From NCBI GenBank assembly GCA_047495785.1, contig JBLDXI010000028.1, positions 992,001-1,056,000 of the forward strand: a stretch of 64,000 bases of DNA, in the 5' to 3' direction. Shown here one piece after another: positions 2,620 to 57,870 of this stretch; within the stretch, counting starts at the first letter, position 1; each line of letters opens with the position of its first letter. The DNA is from Lepidodermella squamata (taxonomy: Eukaryota; Animalia; Gastrotricha). The notes under the pieces were generated by a model. It made no database searches, had not been told where the DNA came from, and saw only the letters and a program-made list of their open reading frames with translations. The translations under genes were made by a program, and so were the position numbers.

Positions 2620-3042
2620 TTAATCTTTCTAAATTATCTATCAAAATAATCGAATTCAGTTATTCCTAAGCAAATGGCGTGGATTTTGTATTCAAAACCC
2701 AACATCGCTGATGAACATCTAACAAGTGCCTAATCAATTTCTGATTTCTGATTATAACTAGAGCAGAAGATGTTTGAATAGTGGTTTAAAGGCGTAGTGA
2801 GTAAGTCAAATATCAAAACTGTCCACCGTGAGTTGCGAGCAAGCATAATCATTACGACTAATAATATATTAATTTATTACAAATGTCGCTGCAACTGAGC
2901 ACAGTCAAGCAAGTCTGGATGCATAGCACAAGCAATAGTTGCAACAACATGGGCGGTTTTTCAAGCTCAGTCTTGAGCAATTGCCGATGATTATCAAGTG
3001 GAGTACAGAAAAATTGCGAATGTCTTAGTTCCTGATAGTGTC

Positions 3043-3213
3043 GAAACACTGTGGATCTGGGCAAACAAATGCAACCTCAGTACAGGAAGAAGCCCAGACG
3101 GGGATCGAACCCGCGACCTTCTGTTTACAACACAGATGCTCTACCACTAAGCAGTAATCCCAGAAACACTGTGGATCTGGGCAAACAAATGCAACCTCAG
3201 TACAGGAAGAAGC
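3043..3213. repeat. Exact 51-bp direct repeat (3043-3093, 3163-3213) around a tRNA fragment
   Basis: GAAACACTGTGGATCTGGGCAAACAAATGCAACCTCAGTACAGGAAGAAGC occurs twice at 120-bp spacing. Confidence 0.9.
3091..3152 (-). pseudogene. 5'-truncated tRNA-Thr(TGT)-like sequence
   Basis: Minus strand GCTTAGTGGTAGAGCATCTGT-GTTGTAA-ACAGAAGGTCGCGGGTTCGATCCCCGTCTGGGCT has D arm, anticodon arm and T arm, but no matching 5' acceptor strand. Confidence 0.65.
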
Positions 3214-38356: not shown

Positions 38357-38704
38357 TTGTAGTCGAAATTTCACACCTCGGTCATCAAATTCAGTAAATT
38401 GAAATGTTGGTGCCCTGTCAAAGTGGAAATTGCCCTTGATTGCAGCAACCAATTGATGTATGATGATCCATAGTGACCGACACGGTTCGGCCATTATTTC
38501 GGTGATAATGTTCATACCCTAAGGCTTAAATCCCCTATAGGCGTACAACTTGCCCTCTTAACGAAATCATTAGTGCTGACAGAAGGAGTTGGATTTTTTT
38601 TCGAGATTTATGAATTGACTAGCCATAATGATGAATTGAATTATATTTCATTCTTCATAGACATATAATAGCAAGGAAAAGTAACCTGTCCGACTAATTC
38701 AAAA

Positions 38705-40081
38705 ATGCTTTCCTGGTTGTTTGGACAGACTTCTCCACTGCTAAACTCAGAAAGAAGTACATGGATTGAACATAGTCTGGAATATGATGCTGAATCGCGT
38801 TCCTCGAATCTGCCCTTGATCGCAAATATTGGCTATGACAGTGAAAAGAAGGTTTTCAAGAAAGTTCAACTATGTTATACGCAGAATAGTTATATGGGAA
38901 TTGCTTATCAGCATTGGTTTATTACTGATGGCGTTAATTTCGTTGAATTCGGTTCCGCCAACTTGAATTACTCCACAGCAAGAGTCAACATCAACACCCT
39001 TCCACGTGACCAATTTTATATTTCGAGAAAGGAAGACATGGATGAAGCAAAACGCGAGCGCTTACGGCATGTCATGGGGATGAAGAACTACTCACTTTGC
39101 CTTCGAAATTGCGAGCACGTTGCCAATTACATCTTTAGAGGGCTTTGGTTCAGCTCTCAGATGGCTGAAGAGGGCGCTTTGATGAAATTCTTTCGTGACT
39201 ATTTCGTCGGTAATTCTAGGCGGTTGATAAATTCGTTTCCTTCAACTATTCGTCCTCATGTGTTTTCGCAAGCGAAAAAGCAACCCGTGTATTCTTTCAT
39301 CACGGAATCTTTCAAAGCAAATGCATTCGATTATTACTTGGATGAAACAGCTAAAACGTTCAATGTTGCGGTGATCGGCCCCACTGGCGCAGGAAAGTCA
39401 AGACTCATCAATGTGTTGTTTAATCACGAAAACTTGAGTAAAAGTGAAGAAAACCTAAAATCTGTCACTCGCGAAGTCTATTTCATCTCCGGCACTGGCG
39501 TAGTCGCGGAATATAATCCTGGTGGACAGGCAAGACATGAAAGTCGAAATGTTATAGTTGCTGATACCGTGGGACTATGTGACACCGACTTTAAGGATGA
39601 GCAAATTATGCAGTTGGTTAAAGGAAGAATTCAGGCTAACATGCGTTACCTTGATGTTGTTATCATAGTTTTCAATAGCCAGGTCCGAATGGAGCAACAA
39701 CATATTAAAAATATTAAACAAGTGCTGGAATGGTTGCAGTACAAAGAGGGTGACAATTGGAAAAGGTTTTTGTTCATTGGTACACATTCAGAGAATTGTA
39801 GCCCGGAAGCAATTGAGCGCCTACGCAGACAATTCATGGAAATATACGAGATTCCCGAGGAGAAATCGCGTTTTGTGGCAGCAGGCGACGGCGAACGCGA
39901 GAGCCAGAATACAGTTATCTTCTCCGGATTTCCACCTGGGGACGAGGAATCAGTTAGCGTTGGCGTTCTTCGACGTGCCAAAGACGATTGGTTAAAAATA
40001 AGAAAGATGTTTGAATATGCAAGACCGGATGCTCCACTGAGTGTCACTCCACCGCGCAACACAATGTGTTCTATATTGTGA
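38705..40081 (+). CDS. LRAT/PLAAT-like (H-NC) domain fused to a GIMAP/AIG1-like GTPase with C-terminal CaaX, copy 1
   Basis: 458-aa intronless ORF: YQHWF (His70), YSLCLRNCEHVANY (Cys136), G1 GPTGAGKS, G2 SVT, G3 DTVG, G4-like THSE, terminal CSIL. Confidence 0.85.
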   Translation: MLSWLFGQTSPLLNSERSTWIEHSLEYDAESRSSNLPLIANIGYDSEKKVFKKVQLCYTQNSYMGIAYQHWFITDGVNFVEFGSANLNYSTARVNINTLPRDQFYISRKEDMDEAKRERLRHVMGMKNYSLCLRNCEHVANYIFRGLWFSSQMAEEGALMKFFRDYFVGNSRRLINSFPSTIRPHVFSQAKKQPVYSFITESFKANAFDYYLDETAKTFNVAVIGPTGAGKSRLINVLFNHENLSKSEENLKSVTREVYFISGTGVVAEYNPGGQARHESRNVIVADTVGLCDTDFKDEQIMQLVKGRIQANMRYLDVVIIVFNSQVRMEQQHIKNIKQVLEWLQYKEGDNWKRFLFIGTHSENCSPEAIERLRRQFMEIYEIPEEKSRFVAAGDGERESQNTVIFSGFPPGDEESVSVGVLRRAKDDWLKIRKMFEYARPDAPLSVTPPRNTMCSIL

Positions 40082-41667
40082 GCTGCTTACCGATTCTCGG
40101 TGCCATTTTTGTTATCCCAGACTTGAAACTAATTCAGTATAAGGCGATATTCACTTTCAACAAATTGCTAGCTTGCGTTGAGTAACTGTCTGTTGAGGCC
40201 TGATAATTTTCTACTTATGCATCATTTCCATTTGAATTGGGTGCTAAAAAGTTACAAATATACAGTAACCAAACAATCAATATTAATGAACTGGAACACT
40301 ATTAACCCTCTAAGGCCGGGAGCGTGTATACTCAAACTACGACTTCTCACCTTGAATTCTCATACTTCTGGATTTTTGCCGGCCAAATGGTTTGGCATAC
40401 GTTTAGATGACCATCTAAATACCCCGATTCCGAAAACCGCAGACTCGCCGCGTTGATTACGTAACACAGGTGAGCGCGCAAATCACGGGCACTCATGCCT
40501 ATTGTGTAAACTCAGGCAAATTTCGACCAAATGACACGGGGGTCGCGCGGGCGGCCTGTTTTGTGTGCATCGGTTCAGTCACCCTGTGTTAATTCAAATG
40601 GCCACTTAAGTTTACTCATGCACATTGTCAATAAATGTTTGATTTCAATTTTTTTACATTTTCTTTTTAAATAAAACTTTTTATGAGTGTGATGAAAAAT
40701 TAAGACACTCGCAGATGCTGCGCAACATAGAATTGCGTAACAACAACAAGCTTTTTACGTTGTTACGTTATAACCATGCAAAATGGAAATAAAAGCGCGG
40801 CTTCGAGTAGAAACATGAGCATCGTCAATATTCATTTACCGAAATTTGCGTCATCCTAACTTTTCGTAACTCATGGATGCGGCTGATAAGCAGCAAGTCT
40901 ACGGCATGGTGGAATCCGATGAGATCGGTTCAACCGATTCCGCGCTCTCGTCATCGGACGATGAACTTGACCGGCCGCTGGCTGACTTCAAGGTGCCTGG
41001 ACAGGTCAAATGGCAAAAGCTGAACGAAGATCGCCAACTTCACATCGAAAAATGCGACCTGAAAAGTCGCCCTACCGACGAATTTGTAACACGAGTCGAG
41101 GCGCTAGGCAAAGGTAGGTATCTAGCCCATACCCATCCGAATTATACTGTAAACGTATTAATTTTCGCGGTATTTTTGAATTCGCGGACGGCCCATTTTC
41201 GGTCATTTTTCATTTTCGCGGATTCTTGAATTCGCGGAGGCAATTTCCGAAAAAGTACCATTTTCGCGTGAGCGAATTTTTCGCGCGCGTGTAATTTTCG
41301 CGGTGATATGAATTCGCGCAAGTGCCGCATCAGTGATTCGCAGAGCCATAGCGCACGCAAATGAACAGGTGCGCTCATGGACCAAACAACAAAGCCTATT
41401 ACGCACATTTGCTCGCGCGGCGAACGCGCGTCCAGGGCGGCGGTTGTCTTTATCGCGGTGTTTGAGGGCGCCGTGTTGTCTGATCGCGATCTTTGATAGA
41501 CACCTTGTCAATCGAGAGCACGCCGTTTGAATTTTATTGGTCCACCCGATGTCCAATAGGAAGCGGCGCGCAGGGTGGCTACGGCGCATGCCGAATTTGT
41601 CGAAAACGTCAAACGTACAGTTCTCGCTCTAATCGCTCTAATTCGCTCTAATACGCTCTAATCGCAA

Positions 41668-43997
41668 ATGAAAACACTCAACGCCTACTTCGCAAGTGTC
41701 CCTAGTCCAAAGGGCGTAATCAAGATCACTCGTGACGACGCGCCCTCGGTGCCGATCACTTCATTGAACGCGGTCAACGACGCTATCTCCGCGCTCTACA
41801 ATGGTAATCCAGCGTCAACGCCGACCGGCAGCCGGAAACGCCCCTCGTCTTACCTGAAAATCTCTGACGAATATCGGCTTAAAATCGCCAAGTTTCAAAT
41901 TAACGGAAGCGCAGCTGAAGCAGCACGCAAGTTTGGTCAAGAGCTCGGTAAGCCGCTCAACGAGTCGACCTGTCGCGGCATCAAGCAGCAATTAGACAAA
42001 AAACTTGCAACCCTCGGCTACGACTTGAGTCAGATCGATTCGCTGCCCAAGGAATCCGGCGCATCTCTTATGATTCCTGACGACACCGATAAAAATATCC
42101 AAATTGTAAGTAACTATTTTTGTTGCTTTTCCCCTTTTTCGTTTGAATAAATTTTCAAATTTGACCGTGAAATTGATGCAAATGAGCAATAATTTTGCTT
42201 TCTTTTCTCTTAGGTCATCGAGAAATTGCGCGAGAAAGGTGCGGTTGTCAACACTTTGGTCGTTCTCTCAATCGCCGAGGCAATCGTTCGCGCCGAGTGC
42301 CCAACGCTACTCATGGGCAAAGGTGGTACCCGCATCAGGCTGACGAAAACGTGGACGCAGAGCCTTTTTCGCCGCATGGGCTACGTAAAGCGCAAGGGTA
42401 CCAAAAGCGCGAAGTCGGATGTGGCGAACAAGGACGAGATCAAGGCGGACTGGTGCCTTCTTGTTCGACGTACTGCCCTTGAGTGCGCCGTTCCGCCTGA
42501 GCTGATAGTTAACTTTGATCAGTTTCCGTCTAAACTAGCTCCGGTTGGCAACTGGACGATGGAGCGGCGAAACTCGAAGCAGGTCAAAATTCATGGCGTC
42601 GATGACAAGCGCGAGATCACCGTCGTTCTCGGCTCAACTATGGCTGGCAGCATTCTGCCGTTTCAGGTTAACTATTTTTTAATTTTTTATTCTCTCGTAT
42701 TTTTGCTGAAGTGACCATACTGCTCGCGCGCAAAATTTTGAATGATTTACCATAGAATCTAGAATATCCACAGCATTTTTTTTTACTTTTTAAACTTTTT
42801 AAACGGTGAAAATTGTATGAAAAATCAAGTTTTCGACGGTGAGGAAGTTCAAGAAACAAATTTGACAGCTAGACAGCGCGTGCTTATGATAAAAATTAGC
42901 GATGAAATAGGGGGAATTAAATCATAATTTTGTTTGTGCGCGCGCTTGTGTGTGCGTGTAAGAGCGCGGAGTTGAGCGCTGCACATGCGCTATTTTTAAT
43001 TAATAAATTTTTTATTTTCATCAACCTAATTACGCGGTTTTGCCTGCAGGTCATTTACGCGGGAAAGACCGAGCGTTGCCACCGTGGACTGGTTTTCCCC
43101 GAAGGTTTCGATGTCACCGAGTCGCCATCTCACTGGTCAGTCGAGCATATGATGAAACGCTAGGTCGTAGAAATTTTGGATCCATATTGCGTCAAAACTC
43201 GCGAGTCGCTCGACCTCCCTCCAGAGCAGCCAGCAATCATCATCCTCGATCATTACGCTTGTCACCTGCAGCCGGAATTCAAGGACTGCTTACGCGAGCA
43301 TCGAATGATACCGATCTATGTTCCTCCCAACCTGACAAGTGAGCTACAACCGGCGGATTTCCTCCTCAATCAATTCGTGAAGAATCGAGTCCGCGACAGG
43401 TACCACGCATGGCACACTGATCAATTTTTCGAAAGTTTTAAGGCGGATGGAGCTAATGCGAAACCAGTTGACACGCTGGCCAGTATCATCAAGCCTCTTC
43501 ATGCTGAATGGCTGGGTGGCGCGTACGCTGACCTGGCTAAGCGACCCGACTTGGTGTTTTCTGCCTGGAAGCGACCGGGAATTTTGTTCAACGAAGTCCC
43601 GTTCGATTTGATCGGCGAGTGCAGCGAGGTAAAAAACGAATTCACCGACAGCGACGACGAGGAGTATGAAAAACCGATCGCTTGCTTCAAAAAGCGCGCC
43701 GTTATTCGCGATTCGCCGACGCCGTCGAATTCTACACCTGTAACGTCAACACCACTTTGGCGGTCGATCACTTCAACGCCTGCTCCGCCTTCCTCGACTC
43801 CACTTCCTTCAACGCCGGTTCCTGTGGCAGAAACAGCACCATCATCGCTTTGCTTCGAGACGGCCGTTTCATCTCAACGGGATGCGAGCGACGAACAGCT
43901 CATCCCAGCAATCGAAGCTAATGTTCTCGCTGAATCGTCTGAACTTCCGTGGTTCGGAGGCACAAACTTCACGAAAACATCGACGCAACAACCATGA
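41668..43997 (+). pseudogene. pogo/Tc2-type DDE_1 transposase (DD35D) with two introns and one in-frame stop, nested in the piggyBac
   Basis: Exons 41668-42105, 42214-42666, 43050-43997; HTH/CENP-B-like N-terminus, VNFDQ, IILDHY and LQPADF catalytic motifs, TAG at 43161-43163. Left end TA|CTGTAAACGTATTAATTTTCGCG at 41147 with TTTTCGCG repeats; no right end found. Confidence 0.85.
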
Positions 43998-44244: not shown

Positions 44245-45455
44245 TTTTTAACATCAAATTTACTTTTTTCAACATCAAATTACTTTTTCTATCATCAAAC
44301 TCTTTTTTCAACAGCAAACTTCAGAAATTGTTATTTGATAGGGAAGAATATGCTTTCATGATGATTTCAAGTGATTATGACCTCGGGTGATGATAGCGGG
44401 CCCAGACTCGTACCAATGAGCTAAGGTGGTCATATCCAGAGGTGGAAACAGGTCAGGTTAACCGGCCGGTAAGCTGACCGGTTGCCGGTTGGGTCGGGTC
44501 GCCGGTTAGGTAGTTTCCAGCCGGTTGACCGGTAAACTGGGCTTTTCGGCATGAAAGCAAAACATATAGCGAATTTAACGTGGCTGCGAGACTTCCGCGA
44601 AATGTTCTGAGTAGCACTCGTAGAGAAAGGACGCTATTTTCAACAATCAGGGGTCTGCGCTAATCGATTATTGGATTTTTGGTGATTCATAGTGGTCGGT
44701 GGTCGAAAGACACTTTCAATTATAAAGAGACCTAGCAAACGGTGATGACATCACCTATTGCCTATTTTTATTGTCGCTACATGCGAAAGTCCCTTGGAGG
44801 AAAGTCCGGCTACGAACGATGTCAGTGCCGGGCAAAGTTGCTTCTCGACGGCGAGACATGGGTGCTGATGGCATCCGGGGCGAAGCAGCGTCACAAGACC
44901 ACTTCCCAACTAACGACACCAGTCGAGAAGCGAATAGAGAAAATTTCTATTCGATGGATACTACAATAGAATCGACACATGCCCATGAAAATCTCCATCG
45001 ACATTGACAATGCCCACCCTCAAGAAAGGGAGCGCATGCGTCTATTCAGTGCAGCGCAACGGCGTAAAACGTTCCGGCGGCTAAACCTTGAAGGGCCCTG
45101 ACTAATTTCACTCATTTGAATCATTGTCTTCGCAAAAAAATGAGAATCGTAAAATTATTCGGACAAATATTTAAAAATTCAATTTTTTTGGCCAAAAATC
45201 AAATATTTGTCCGTAACTTTGCAAAATCACAGATAACTCAATTTTACATATTTTTATAAACGGGTTCGACAGCAATAAACTACATTGTTCACCCGAAATG
45301 CTATTTTTCTGTTATTTTTCCGGACTGGTCATTATCAAGGGCTTTAATGAGTGTGGATCGCAAAAATTAACATATCGAAATTTGCTGTTGAAAAAAGAGT
45401 TTAATGATGGAAAAGTAATTTGATGTTGAAAAAAGTAAATTTGATGTTGAATAAA
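44245..45455. mobile_element. Inverted-repeat element family X, copy 1 (inside the piggyBac)
   Basis: About 75-bp inverted repeats (CAACATCAAATTAC / GTAATTTGATGTTG). Related copy at 45866-46822 and a fragment at 56665-56800. Confidence 0.65.
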
Positions 45456-45865: not shown

Positions 45866-46822
45866 AACATCAAATTACTTTTCCTATCATCAAACTCAAA
45901 TTAGTATTTGATATAGGGAAGAATATACTTTCATGATGAAGTTTTGGATTTTATATGCTTATGACCCCGGGTGATGAAAGCGGGGTCCAGACAATTTTTT
46001 ATGGTCATGTCTATGTGAACACAGGATTGTGTATTGCCTAATGGCTATGCGTACACATCGTATGCGTGATTGGCTACTTGAACACTGCGCGAGTTTAAAT
46101 TTGGCTGTGTGCCACGCACATTCTGTACGCTTAGTACGCTTAGTACCTTCCTCATTGGCTTCACCTATACAAGTGAATCGCCCTTATAGTAATGTTGAGA
46201 ACAAACCCATCCTATAACTGAGAGCAGGCAGAAGATTGAGCCAAAACTGGCAACAAGACATTACACTTTGGTCTTTCAGAAATGAGATTTGGATTTTTGT
46301 TGAGGAACTCGAACCTAGATCCATACTTACTATCCATATTAAGGGATTGCATACAGCGGTTAGCGATTGCTAACATTGTTTTGGGCCAAAGAATCACATA
46401 TGCTTCACACCTCCGCTTGTGGCTGGGGCGCAGCCACTGCAGTGCATGATTCAGTGCAGCGCAACGGCGTCGAAAGCGTTACGGCGGCTTAACCTTGACT
46501 AATTTCACTTATTTGAAAAAAAAACGAGAATCGTAAAATTACTGGGACGAATAATATTCAAAAAATTAATTTTGTTGGCCAAAAATCAAATATTTGTCCG
46601 TAACTTTGCAAAATTACAACAAAGTCGATTTTCTATTATTTTATGAGGGGGTTCGACAACAATAAATTACATTCTCCCCCAGAATTTCCTGTTATTTTCT
46701 CGGACTGGGCATCATCAAGGGCTTTGAGGAGAGTGGGTCGCAAAATTTAACATAGGTATCGAAATTTGCTGTTGAAAAAAGAGTTTGATGATAGAAAAAG
46801 TAATTTGATGTTGAATAAAATG
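45866..46822. mobile_element. Inverted-repeat element family X, copy 2
   Basis: Shares both arms with 44245-45455 but has an unrelated middle. Confidence 0.65.
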
Positions 46823-54770: not shown

Positions 54771-55123
54771 GGCTATACGGAATAAGCGATATTTTCAATT
54801 GCCATATAGTGGCCGAACCGTAAGGGTCGCTATGGATCATCATATATCAATCGATCGCTGTAATCAAGGAATTTCGATTAATGTCCGATCGAATTCCACG
54901 CGGTACATTCAGGGTGACGTTTTTGGCCAAAAGACGCGAATGTTGCGCATTTCATTCAACTTCGAAGGCAAAATCATATTCCCAAAAGTCCACGCGGAAT
55001 TCGATCGGGCACCTATCGATTGCCCTTGATTACAGCAACCAATTGATGTATGATGATCCATAGTGACCCTCACGGCTCACGGTTCGGCAATTATTTCGGT
55101 GATAATGCTCATACCCTAAGGCT
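54771..55123. mobile_element. Old PIF/Harbinger-like MITE upstream of the fusion gene
   Basis: 54811-54875 is an inverted copy of 55020-55090; TAA at both ends; only the right half survives in unit 1 (38430-38530). Confidence 0.55.
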
Positions 55124-55281
55124 TAAATCCCCTATAGGCGTACAACTAGCCCTCTTAACGAAATAATCATTAGTGCTGACAGAAGGAGTTGGATTTTTGG
55201 CGAGTTTTATTAATTGAATTATATTTCATTCTTCACAGGCATATAATAGCAAGAAAAAGTACCTGCCTGACTAATTCAAAA

Positions 55282-56655
55282 ATGTTTGCCGGGTTGTTAG
55301 GAAAGTCTTCTCCACTGCTAGAATCAGAAAAGAGGACATGGAATGAACATAGTCTGGAATTTGATGCTCAATCGCGTTCCGCGAATCTGCCCTTGATCGC
55401 AAATTTCGGCTATGACAGTGAAAACAAGGTTTACAAGGCAGTTCAACTATGTTATACGGTGGCTAGTTATATGGGTATTACTTATCAGCATTGGTTTATT
55501 ACTGATGGCGTTAATTACGTTGAATTCGGTTCCGCCGCCTTGGATTACTCCACAGCAAGAGTCAACATCAACACCCTTCCACATGGCGAATTTATTATTC
55601 CGAAAGAGGAAAGCATGGATGAAGCAAAACGCGAGCGCTTACGGCATGTCATAGGGATGAAGAACTACTCACTTTGCCTTCGAAATTGCGAGCATGTTGC
55701 CAATTACATCTTTAATGGGCATTGGTACAGCTCTCAGCTGGCCGAAAATGGCGCTTTGATGCGATTCTTTCGTAACTGTTTCGCCGGTGATTCTAGACTG
55801 TTGATAAATTCGTTTCCTTCAAGTATTCGTCCTCATGTGTTTTCGAAAGAGAAAAAGCAACCCGTGTATACTTTCATCACGACATCTTTCAATGCTAACC
55901 GATTCAACTATCACTTGGATGAAACAGCTAAAACATTCAATGTTGCGGTGATCGGCCCCACTGGCGCAGGAAAATCTCGACTCATCAATGTGTTGTTTAA
56001 TCACGAAAACTTGTGTAAAAGTGAAGGATCCTTCAAATCTGTCACTCGCGATGTCTATTTCATCTCCGGCACTGGCGTAGTCACGGAATATGAAGGCAAC
56101 AATCCTGAGGGAGAGGCAAGACTTAAAGGTCGACAGGTTATAGTTGCTGATACCGTGGGACTATGTAACACCGACTGTTCAGATGAGCAAGTTATGCAGT
56201 TGGTTAAAGGAAGAATTCAGGCCAACATGCGTTACCTTGATGTTGTAATCATTGTTTTTAAAGGCCAGGTCCGAATGGAGCAACAGCATATTAGAAACAT
56301 TAAACAAGTGCTGGAATGGTTGCATTACAAAGAGGGTGACAATTGGATGAGGTTTTTGTTCATTGGTACTCACACAGAGAATTGTAACCAGGAAGCAATT
56401 GAGCGCCTACGCAGTCAATTCATGGAAATATTCGAGATTCCGAAGGAGAAAACTTGTCGATTTGCCGAGCGTTTGGTGGCAGCAGGCGAGGGCTGGACTG
56501 AAAGTAAAATCGAGGGCCAGAATACAGTAATCTTCTCCGGATTTCCACCTGAGGACTCAGTTAGCGTTGGCGCCCTTCGACGTGTCCACAACGATTGGTT
56601 ACGAATAAGAAAGATTTTTTGTTATGCAGGACTGAGTGCTCCACTGAAAGTATGA
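55282..56655 (+). CDS. LRAT/PLAAT-like plus GIMAP/AIG1-like GTPase fusion, copy 2 (no CaaX)
   Basis: ATG at 55282 aligns with the copy 1 start; YQHWF, NCEHV, GPTGAGKS, DTVG and THTE all retained; ends SAPLKV*. Confidence 0.85.
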   Translation: MFAGLLGKSSPLLESEKRTWNEHSLEFDAQSRSANLPLIANFGYDSENKVYKAVQLCYTVASYMGITYQHWFITDGVNYVEFGSAALDYSTARVNINTLPHGEFIIPKEESMDEAKRERLRHVIGMKNYSLCLRNCEHVANYIFNGHWYSSQLAENGALMRFFRNCFAGDSRLLINSFPSSIRPHVFSKEKKQPVYTFITTSFNANRFNYHLDETAKTFNVAVIGPTGAGKSRLINVLFNHENLCKSEGSFKSVTRDVYFISGTGVVTEYEGNNPEGEARLKGRQVIVADTVGLCNTDCSDEQVMQLVKGRIQANMRYLDVVIIVFKGQVRMEQQHIRNIKQVLEWLHYKEGDNWMRFLFIGTHTENCNQEAIERLRSQFMEIFEIPKEKTCRFAERLVAAGEGWTESKIEGQNTVIFSGFPPEDSVSVGALRRVHNDWLRIRKIFCYAGLSAPLKV

Positions 56656-57870
56656 AAACATAACTATTGGGACGAATAAAATTCAATTTTGTTGGTCAAA
56701 AATCAAATATTTGTCTGTAACTTTGCAAAATTACAACCAAGTCGATTTTCTATAATTTTATTAGCTGGATCGACAACAATAAACCACATTCTCTGCGCAG
56801 AATTTTGCAAGGCCAAATCGCAAATGTTGTTCATTTCGATCAAGTAATCGTGCATTAGAGCATTTAACGAATAACTAAGTCAAAATGAACAACTGTCAAG
56901 TGCCGGGCGAAAAAAATTGACCCCGCTGCGGGGAGACATTTTTCTTCCGCTCTTGTGTGTTTTGGACGGTCAGTTCGGTCAGTGTTAAGTGCACATGACG
57001 CAAACAGGAAATCACAAAAATTGCGATTTGGTGTTGCAAACTTACCCATTTCAAGCCGGGCCCTAACAGACGTTATCTGGATTGCATGATTTCTGAAGCC
57101 GGATAACAACAATATTCGGTTGTTATCGGTTGTCGTAGATGGATATTGGTCCTTCAGCCCACTCCAGCCTTCGCCTCGTTTTTCATCGTTATATCCAACT
57201 ATGATATACTTATGACTTATGATATATATACACCGATCCCCCGTATATGGGAGTTATCCGGCGACATATATCGTTAAATCTGGATATTGTTTAATACATA
57301 ATATCACTCAGCTACCCCACAGATCCACCAGCTATCCCGCAAGCTACAACAATCCCACAATCCCACAGATTGTGGGACTTGTGATAGGGAACAATCCCAC
57401 ATAGGGAACAATCCCACAGATCCCGCAAGGATGTGGGAAGAATTTAGACGTTTGGTGTTGCAATAATAAATAATAATAATAATGGTTTTATTTAGTCCTC
57501 CTCTCGACTAAGCATCTATACCGTAAAAACGGTTTTGAGGAGGGCGAAGGCAGGCGAAAGATGGAAATCACCCACCCCCACAGTTGAAGATTCTACTTTT
57601 TCCAAAAAATTCATAATCATTCATTGAGTCAACAATGTTGCGCCATTCGATTTTATCAAAAGATAGTAATTCAGTCAATTGCAGATCAGGAATAATTTTA
57701 ATTTCAAATTTATTCTCTTTTTCGCCGGATTTTTTATTTTTAGCTGGCTTTTTGCCTTTCTGATTTTTGGGTTGTCTTTTCTTCATTGGTGTTGCAAATT
57801 GAGCCATTTTAACGTTTGGTGTTGCAAACTACCTTTTGGTGAATTAAGCTTCATTTTGGTGATCTAAATA

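What the first reader, a model, noticed from the sequence alone, without database searches (positions are those of the whole stretch)
38705..38917. Strong excess of amino-acid-changing differences between the two fusion paralogs
Hand alignment of the first 71 codons (38705-38917 vs 55282-55494) shows 20 codons with an amino-acid change and only one purely synonymous change (Gly65 GGA/GGT). Catalytic and GTPase motifs are kept and both frames stay open. This is above the roughly 3:1 ratio expected under neutrality and suggests diversifying selection, as in host-pathogen arms races.
Basis: partly seen in the sequence, partly recalled or inferred. Interest (0 to 1): 0.75.

Follow-up and report, generated by a model that had tools for sequence, protein, structure and literature searches.

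The report
Fast-evolving duplicated enzyme–GTPase gene pair
Two neighbouring copies of an invertebrate gene change their protein about as fast as their silent sites, 10 to 50 times faster than sister genes, but the evidence shows loosened constraint and does not prove an arms race.

Summary
The count is right: in the first 71 codons, 20 codons change the amino acid and one is silent. It does not hold gene-wide. Over 445 aligned codons there are 96 replacement and 23 silent-only codons, against a neutral 3.6:1. dN/dS is 0.93-1.06, not different from 1 (p=0.8).

The early excess comes from too few silent changes, not too many replacements. Replacement divergence is flat along the gene. Silent divergence is about 0.05 in codons 1-204 and about 0.20 after.

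Both genes are real and still under selection:
- Both frames are open (P about 0.001 under neutrality).
- All four indels are in frame.
- Family-invariant residues are spared.
- Replacements are conservative.

Two sister pairs of the same family have dN/dS of 0.02-0.11, so this pair is strongly accelerated, about equally in both copies. Both copies lost the family's N-terminal Met-Gly signal, and copy B also lost the C-terminal lipid-anchor signal.

Measured against local silent sites, the N-terminal half gives dN/dS near 3 (nominal p 0.004-0.016). A scan correction gives p=0.14, and a site test loses significance once multi-base changes are allowed. Positive selection stays possible but unproven.

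The scan has described other genes of this family in this genome, but not this rate question.

The parts
38705..40081 (+). Copy A: intron-free gene of 458 codons. It has a PLAAT/LRAT-like N-domain, a linker, an AIG1/GIMAP/Toc34-type GTPase and a C-terminal CSIL (CaaX) signal.
   Evidence: ORF and translation. Pfam MMR_HSR1 and AIG1. Motifs. GTPase fold matches Toc34 and GIMAP7.
55282..56655 (+). Copy B: paralog of 457 codons, 78% identical in protein to A. The domains are the same, but the last 11 residues of A, including the CaaX, are missing.
   Evidence: Every other paralog read in full (7 of the 8 besides A and B; L010 was not read) and nearly all outside relatives end in CxIL.
38429..40040 (+). 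Duplicated segment, A side: 276 nt upstream plus nearly the whole coding region. The partner is 55019-56647.
   Evidence: Self-BLAST gives 86.4% identity over 1660 columns. The flank alignments show homology ending on both sides.
55019..56647 (+). Duplicated segment, B side.
38705..38917 (+). It holds 20 replacement codons and 1 silent codon.
38705..39316 (+). Codons 1-204 of A (B: 55282-55893): the part with low silent divergence. Silent differences are 6.5 per 129 sites and replacement differences 59.5 per 483 sites.
   Evidence: Change-point at codon 204, permutation p=0.0175. Fisher tests. dN/dS 2.4-3.7.
39317..40078 (+). Codons 205 to the end of A (GTPase and tail). Silent differences are 27.8 per 155.5 sites and replacement 59.2 per 567.5, giving dN/dS of 0.54-0.63.
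38429..38549 (.). Copy of a dispersed repeat of about 126 nt that forms the left end of the duplicated segment. The B-side copy is about 54990-55146 and reaches further left.
   Evidence: More than 40 copies in the genome and a 424-bp tandem array on contig C33. No Rfam or tRNA match.
56678..56805 (.). Repeat directly after the end of homology downstream of B, with copies at 45174-45286 and 46562-46687. It marks where B loses the ancestral tail.

Best explanation
A and B are two intact, selected paralogs made by a local 1.6-kb duplication. They belong to a family of intron-free genes that join a PLAAT/LRAT-like Cys-His enzyme domain to an AIG1/GIMAP-type GTPase. The family normally carries an N-terminal Met-Gly start, which I infer to be a myristoylation signal, and a C-terminal CaaX lipid-anchor signal.

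The A/B lineage is an offshoot that has shed these signals. Both copies lost the Met-Gly start, and B also lost the CaaX. Purifying selection on most of the protein has loosened sharply. Replacements now accumulate about as fast as silent changes (dN/dS about 1), roughly equally in both copies. The catalytic and nucleotide-binding core, the reading frames and the chemical character of the replaced residues are still protected.

It reflects a shortage of silent changes in the 5' 200 codons, either by chance, by some constraint on silent and promoter sites, or because that part was homogenised later. It does not reflect a gene-wide excess of replacements.

Shown here: the counts, dN/dS, the contrast with sister pairs, the retained constraint and the anchor losses. 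Inferred: that relaxation rather than adaptation explains most of the acceleration, and that loss of the anchor signals is connected to it.
For: - Gene-wide dN/dS is 0.93 (NG86), 1.06 (my GY94 likelihood) and 0.94-1.06 (Biopython, four methods). None differs from 1.
- Differences are even over codon positions: 55, 45 and 53.
- Replacement divergence is flat along the gene: 43/357 against 76/694, p=0.61.
- Sister pairs L005/L006 and L007/L008 have dN/dS of 0.11 and 0.02 at dS 0.19-0.24.
- Change is symmetric: 20 replacements polarised to A and 23 to B, with tree branch lengths of 0.15 and 0.22 behind a long shared stem.
- Constraint persists. Only 2 of 74 family-invariant columns differ, against 94 of 371 others (p=1.6e-6). 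The chance that both frames stay open under neutrality is about 0.001. All four coding indels are multiples of three. Replacements are more conservative than random mutation, mean BLOSUM62 +0.39 against -0.39, with none of 5000 resamples reaching the observed mean.
- Anchor signals: the family starts MG and ends CxIL. A and B have F or L where the ancestral Met stood, and B has no CaaX.
- With one silent rate for the whole gene, the N-domain dN/dS is 1.1.
- The M2a-M1a site test drops from LRT 19 to 3.4 (p=0.19) once multi-base changes are allowed. Adjacent-base differences are in excess, 33 against 17 expected.
Against: - Pure relaxation cannot push dN/dS above 1. Yet with a large share of sites still constrained, a gene-wide value of 1 implies more than 1 at the remaining sites. 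Family-variable columns give 1.55-1.92 (p=0.003-0.09).
- The shortage of silent changes in codons 1-204 is unlikely by chance (permutation p=0.0175).
- The upstream non-coding DNA (18/253) matches that low value and differs from the 3' silent value (p=0.001).
- Against those local yardsticks, the N-terminal half has dN/dS near 3 (p=0.003-0.016).
Confidence: 0.5

Rival explanations
1. Positive (diversifying) selection on the N-terminal, LRAT-like half. The promoter and about the first 200 codons were homogenised by gene conversion after the original duplication. Since then replacements there have been fixed two to three times faster than silent changes, while the GTPase half stayed under mild purifying selection.
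For: - Silent divergence forms a two-age mosaic: 6.5/129 in codons 1-204 against 27.8/155.5 afterwards (permutation p=0.0175). Four-fold sites differ at 1/48 against 10/101. The upstream non-coding DNA fits the 5' value.
- dN/dS for codons 1-150 is 2.4-3.9 and for 1-204 is 2.4-3.7.
- The likelihood-ratio test against 1 gives p=0.008 and 0.004 with single-base changes, and p=0.014 and 0.016 with multi-base changes allowed.
- Replacement sites against local silent plus upstream non-coding sites: p=0.0026.
- Codons 205 to the end have dN/dS of 0.54-0.63.
- In sister pairs the same LRAT-like domain has dN/dS of 0.04-0.05.
Against: - Only two sequences and 34 silent differences in all.
- The partition was chosen after looking. 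A segment scan corrected by permutation gives p=0.14. Bonferroni correction over four domains gives about 0.03-0.06.
- Replacement divergence is the same in both halves. That is natural under one age but a coincidence under two ages.
- Replacements are mostly conservative.
- The upstream DNA may be constrained as a promoter, and part of it is a repeat element.
- No orthologue above 45% identity was found among 5.8 billion proteins, so recurrence cannot be tested.
Confidence: 0.33
2. One copy is a decaying pseudogene, most likely B because it is truncated and has no anchor signals. Its neutral drift inflates the pairwise ratio.
For: B lacks the conserved CaaX and the Met-Gly start. B departs from two well-conserved columns, D293N and W296C. 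B has the slightly longer branch.
Against: - If only one copy drifted neutrally, the pairwise dN/dS would be about 0.5, below the bootstrap interval of 0.65-1.39.
- Changes are split about evenly, 20 to A and 23 to B.
- B's frame is open over 457 codons, P about 0.02-0.05 for one copy under neutrality.
- All indels are in frame.
- Invariant columns are spared.
Confidence: 0.07
3. Artefact: the two copies are an assembly duplication or haplotypes, or the excess comes from misalignment.
For: None found.
Against: - The copies sit on the same contig, 16.6 kb apart, at 14% divergence, with unrelated flanks and a degraded transposase between them.
- The first 270 codons align without any gap.
- Leaving out codons within 3 of a gap does not change the results.
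Confidence: 0.01

Closest known systems
Rate acceleration and relaxed purifying selection in young gene duplicates (general knowledge: Lynch and Conery 2000 and later work)
   Same: A recent local duplicate pair (dS about 0.13) with dN/dS far above the family baseline. One copy is structurally truncated by the duplication boundary.
   Different: The acceleration is about symmetric and seems to predate the duplication, given the long shared stem. dN/dS reaches 1 while the frames and the core are clearly kept.
Immunity-related GTPase families that evolve by birth-and-death with positive selection (GIMAP/AIG1, IRG, GBP; general knowledge)
   Same: An AIG1/GIMAP/Toc34-type GTPase domain. A multi-copy family in the genome, with at least 10 members. 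One fast-evolving pair.
   Different: No immune role has been shown. The other pairs are strongly conserved. dN/dS above 1 is not robustly shown. The GTPase half is the more constrained half here.
PLAAT/H-rev107/LRAT enzymes and the picornavirus 2A H-box/NC proteins
   Same: The H-box (HWF) and the NC motif (NCEH) are kept in A and B. Pfam LRAT matches 18 of 25 relatives. Weak fold matches point the same way: Aichivirus 2A at Z 5.2, PLAAT4 at Z 4.2 and PLAAT3 at TM 0.52.
   Different: The domain is fused to a GTPase. A and B themselves do not reach Pfam LRAT at E of 0.01 or better. The fold matches are below the level that proves kinship. Activity is untested.
False positive-selection signals from multi-nucleotide mutations (Venkat et al., bioRxiv 10.1101/165969) and from variation in silent rates (10.1101/174839)
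   Same: There is an excess of codons with 2-3 changes (30 against 16 expected) and of adjacent differences (33 against 17). The site test loses significance when multi-base changes are modelled. Silent-rate heterogeneity drives the regional signal.
   Different: The regional test on the N-terminal half stays nominally significant under the multi-base model.

Membership tests
Genes under diversifying (positive) selection | Gene-wide dN/dS significantly above 1 | tested here: not met
   dN/dS is 0.93-1.06, p=0.75-0.80, bootstrap interval 0.65-1.39.
Genes under diversifying (positive) selection | A class of sites with dN/dS above 1, robust to the model used | tested here: inconclusive
   M2a against M1a gives LRT 19 (p=7.5e-5) with single-base changes only, and LRT 3.4-4.3 (p=0.11-0.19) with multi-base changes allowed. 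Family-variable columns give 1.55-1.92, p=0.003-0.09.
Genes under diversifying (positive) selection | A region with dN/dS above 1 against its local silent rate | tested here: inconclusive
   Codons 1-150 and 1-204 give dN/dS of 2.4-3.9, nominal p=0.004-0.016. After scan correction p=0.14. With a shared silent rate the value is 1.1.
Genes under diversifying (positive) selection | Recurrent change at the same sites across several lineages or alleles | not testable with these tools
   The best outside relative is 45% identical. Neither exact protein is in the 15-billion collection. The next paralog is 47% identical.
Pseudogene (neutral decay) | Stops, frameshifts, or loss of invariant residues at the neutral rate | tested here: not met
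   Both frames are open, P about 0.001. Indels are in frame. Only 2 of 74 invariant columns differ, p=1.6e-6.
AIG1/GIMAP/Toc34-type GTPases | P-loop GxxxxGKS and DTxG, plus a Pfam match | tested here: met
   GPTGAGKS and DTVG are present in both copies. MMR_HSR1 scores 38.7 and 37.6 bits, above its cut-off. AIG1 scores 25.4 and 24.3 bits, just under its cut-off of 27. All 25 relatives match AIG1, best E 6e-14.
AIG1/GIMAP/Toc34-type GTPases | Fold of the GTPase domain | tested here: met
   Foldseek matches Toc34 (E 4.7e-9), Toc33 and GIMAP7 (E 1.3e-7) with a model of pLDDT 78.5. A family profile hits septins and GIMAP7 in the PDB at E around 1e-8.
AIG1/GIMAP/Toc34-type GTPases | Canonical guanine-specificity motif (N/T)KxD | tested here: not met
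   A has THSE and B has THTE. The family as a whole varies here (T-Y/F/H/K-A/S-D/E), so this is a family trait and not a defect of the pair.
PLAAT/LRAT (NlpC/P60-type Cys-His enzymes) | H-box His and NC-motif Cys | tested here: met
   YQHWF and RNCEHV are identical in A and B and nearly invariant in the family.
PLAAT/LRAT (NlpC/P60-type Cys-His enzymes) | Profile match and fold | tested here: inconclusive
   A and B give no PF04970 match at E of 0.01 or better. 18 of 25 relatives do, best E 4.2e-6. The N-domain model has pLDDT of only 63.8. Its matches are Aichivirus 2A at Z 5.2, PLAAT4 at Z 4.2, and PLAAT3 at TM 0.52 with E 0.9.
PLAAT/LRAT (NlpC/P60-type Cys-His enzymes) | Phospholipase or acyltransferase activity | not testable with these tools
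   Needs an enzyme assay.

The most novel reading that the evidence does not exclude
After a gene conversion reset the promoter and the first 200 or so codons, the LRAT-like half of both copies went through a burst of adaptive replacement. About 23% of its residues changed while only about 5% of silent sites did. This happened in an offshoot of a normally doubly lipid-anchored enzyme-GTPase family that has shed its anchor signals. That would mark the enzyme domain, not the GTPase, as the surface in conflict with a changing partner such as a pathogen or symbiont factor.
Probability: 0.3. Interest if true: 0.55.

Novelty: new member of a known kind. Interest (0 to 1): 0.3.

Why it matters
The family, a PLAAT/LRAT-like enzyme fused to an AIG1-type GTPase with lipid-anchor signals at both ends, has no studied member. 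Knowing which parts are free to change and which are frozen is a first functional map.

The A/B pair shows that the family can lose both anchor signals and evolve 10-50 times faster while keeping its catalytic and nucleotide-binding residues. That makes it a natural experiment on what the anchors and the variable surface do.

The case also shows that a striking replacement-to-silent count in a short stretch can come from a local shortage of silent changes. It further shows that standard site tests can be carried by multi-base changes.

Tried and rejected
- **IQ-TREE.** It failed on the thread setting and then timed out. I used FastTree instead.
- **Alleles or close orthologues.** Neither exact protein is in the collection, and the best outside relative is 45% identical. 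A multi-species codeml or HyPhy analysis and a McDonald-Kreitman test were therefore impossible. Paralogs at 38-47% identity are too saturated at silent sites and served only to polarise amino-acid changes.
- **Overlapping reading frame to explain silent-site conservation.** None longer than 47-80 codons, and none shared by both copies.
- **Structured RNA or tRNA in the conserved upstream repeat.** No match.
- **Mapping variable sites on a structure.** The tool returns no coordinates. I could only compare with secondary structure and confidence, where differences are a little commoner in low-confidence blocks (30% against 17%).
- **Rejected readings.** Pseudogene and assembly artefact, for the reasons given under rival explanations.
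- **Literature.** A search for the LRAT-AIG1 fusion found nothing.

Full report
**What is there**

The window comes from a 121-Mb eukaryotic genome. Its neighbours are animal-type genes: LDL-receptor repeats, a UDP-glycosyltransferase, RPN11 and a DAO oxidoreductase.

At 38705-40081 (copy A, 458 codons) and 55282-56655 (copy B, 457 codons) lie two intron-free open frames, 78% identical in protein. They belong to a duplicated segment of only 1.6 kb, 38429-40040 against 55019-56647, at 86.4% identity. The segment holds 276 nt of upstream DNA and nearly the whole coding region. A degraded DDE transposase lies between the copies. The flanks are unrelated, so this is not an assembly artefact.

**Domains**

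- The C-terminal half is an AIG1/GIMAP/Toc34-type GTPase. Pfam MMR_HSR1 scores above its cut-off and AIG1 just under it. A family profile hits septins and GIMAP7 among solved structures. A model with pLDDT 78.5 matches Toc34 and GIMAP7.
- The N-terminal 150 residues carry the H-box (HWF) and NC (NCEH) motifs of PLAAT/LRAT enzymes. Pfam LRAT matches 18 of 25 relatives but not A or B themselves. Fold matches are weak but consistent: Aichivirus 2A at Z 5.2, then PLAAT4, PLAAT3 and other NlpC/P60-like hydrolases.

**The family**

The genome has at least ten paralogs. Outside relatives, 45% identical at most, occur in a nematode, a springtail, sciarid flies, a bdelloid rotifer and many metagenome contigs.

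The family starts with Met-Gly and ends in CxIL. In both A and B the ancestral Met is F or L, and the frame starts five codons upstream, so Gly is not residue 2. B also lacks the CaaX. Its homology to A stops 11 codons before A's end and a repeat follows.

**Checking the count**

A neutral simulation on this stretch expects 18.7 and 5.1, P=0.026. Per-site tests are not significant: Fisher p=0.31, and the likelihood-ratio test gives p=0.12-0.24.

Over all 445 aligned codons there are 96 replacement and 23 silent-only codons, against a neutral expectation of 3.6:1. dN is 0.122 and dS is 0.132, so dN/dS is 0.93 with a bootstrap interval of 0.65-1.39. My GY94 likelihood gives 1.06, p=0.80. Four Biopython methods give 0.94-1.06. 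The three codon positions differ equally: 55, 45 and 53.

**Why the first codons look extreme**

Replacement divergence is flat along the gene: 43/357 in codons 1-150 against 76/694 afterwards, p=0.61. Silent divergence is not flat. The best change-point is codon 204, with 6.5 silent differences per 129 sites before it and 27.8 per 155.5 after it (permutation p=0.0175).

The upstream non-coding DNA differs at 18 of 253 sites. That fits the 5' silent value (p=0.50) and not the 3' one (p=0.001).

**Is the pair decaying?**

No, for four reasons:
- Under neutral substitution, the chance that both frames stay open is about 0.001.
- All four coding indels are multiples of three, while the short upstream stretch has indels of other lengths.
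- Only 2 of 74 family-invariant columns differ between A and B, against 94 of 371 other columns (p=1.6e-6).
- Replacements are more conservative than random mutation.

The changes are shared about equally: 20 polarised to A, 23 to B and 53 ambiguous, with branch lengths of 0.15 and 0.22. That argues against a single dead copy.

**How unusual is dN/dS of 1 in this family?**

Very unusual. Two collinear pairs on contigs C25 and C26 have similar or larger silent divergence (0.19 and 0.24). L005/L006 has dN/dS of 0.11 and L007/L008 has 0.02. Within their LRAT-like domain the value is 0.04-0.05. The A/B lineage, which also sits on a long stem in the tree, therefore evolves 10-50 times faster at the protein level.

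**Is there positive selection?**

The evidence is mixed.

For it:
- Measured against its own silent sites, codons 1-150 give dN/dS of 2.4-3.9 and codons 1-204 give 2.4-3.7.
- The likelihood-ratio p values are 0.008 and 0.004. They become 0.014 and 0.016 when double and triple changes are allowed.
- Replacement sites against local silent plus upstream non-coding sites give p=0.0026.
- Family-variable columns give 1.55-1.92 under a shared silent rate, p=0.003-0.09.

Against it:
- The partitions were chosen after looking at the data.
- A permutation-corrected scan for any segment with more replacement than silent divergence gives p=0.14.
- With one silent rate for the gene, the N-domain value is 1.1.
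- The M2a-M1a site test falls from LRT 19 to 3.4-4.3 (p=0.11-0.19) when multi-base changes are modelled.
- Such changes are clearly in excess: 30 multi-hit codons against 16 expected, and 33 adjacent differences against 17. This is a known cause of false positives (bioRxiv 10.1101/165969). Variation in silent rates is another (10.1101/174839).

**Reading**

Two coherent scenarios remain.
1. **One age for the whole duplicate.** Constraint is strongly relaxed after the loss of the anchor signals, dN/dS is near 1 outside the conserved core, and the 5' shortage of silent and upstream changes is due to chance or some constraint.
2. **A later gene conversion.** The promoter and about the first 200 codons were homogenised, and adaptive replacement in the LRAT-like half followed.

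Scenario 1 needs one coincidence at roughly the 2% level. Scenario 2 needs strong positive selection plus the coincidence that replacement divergence came out equal in both halves. I rate them about 0.5 and 0.33. A pseudogene reading gets 0.07 and an artefact 0.01. With only two sequences and 34 silent differences, the question cannot be settled here.

**Relation to earlier notes of the scan**

Other paralogs of this family in this genome have been described by other agents as lipid-anchored LRAT-like-GTPase fusions. I confirmed the conserved end signals on my own alignment. I also saw the hydrophobic N-terminal segment of the C25, C26 and C9 paralogs. The rate question had not been followed up in any report shown to me.

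**Limits**

No coordinates of the predicted models were available, so the variable sites could not be placed on a surface. No expression data were available. All likelihood models were my own scripts, cross-checked against Biopython.

Noticed in passing
window 38429-38549; 54990-55146; inverted partial copy 54806-54903; L023 (C33:2483052-2484449): The left end of the duplicated segment is a dispersed repeat of about 126 nt. It has more than 40 copies in the genome at 73-88% identity and forms a 424-bp tandem array on contig C33. It has no Rfam or tRNA match. The B-side copy extends further left than the A-side copy.
   Followed up: partly
window 38705-38725 and 55282-55302; 40037-40081 against 56644-56655: The family consensus starts MG and ends CxIL. 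In A and B the ancestral Met is F or L, and a new ATG lies five codons upstream, so the Met-Gly start is lost in both. B also lacks the CaaX because homology ends at 56647 and a repeat (56678-56805) follows.
   Followed up: yes
L005/L006 and L007/L008 (contigs C25 and C26, collinear): The silent divergence of these pairs (0.19-0.24) is several times the divergence of their non-coding flanks (about 2-6%). Third codon positions differ more than the neighbouring non-coding DNA. Unexplained.
   Followed up: no
L005:about 2730-3130 (minus strand) against L006: The first 70 or so codons (a hydrophobic N-terminal segment) plus about 200 nt upstream are 16% different (dS 0.44, dN/dS 0.30). The remaining 400 codons have only 3 replacement differences. 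This is a locally old or converted segment at the 5' end of another pair of the family.
   Followed up: partly
window 43176-43997 (also ORFs 40873-42714): A degraded DDE_1 (pogo/Tc5-like) transposase ORF lies in a GC-richer stretch between the two copies.
   Followed up: no
window 39761-39784 and 56347-56370 (motif FIGTHSEN / FIGTHTEN): The guanine-specificity motif is THSE or THTE instead of (N/T)KxD. The whole family varies at this motif, which raises the question of its nucleotide specificity.
   Followed up: partly
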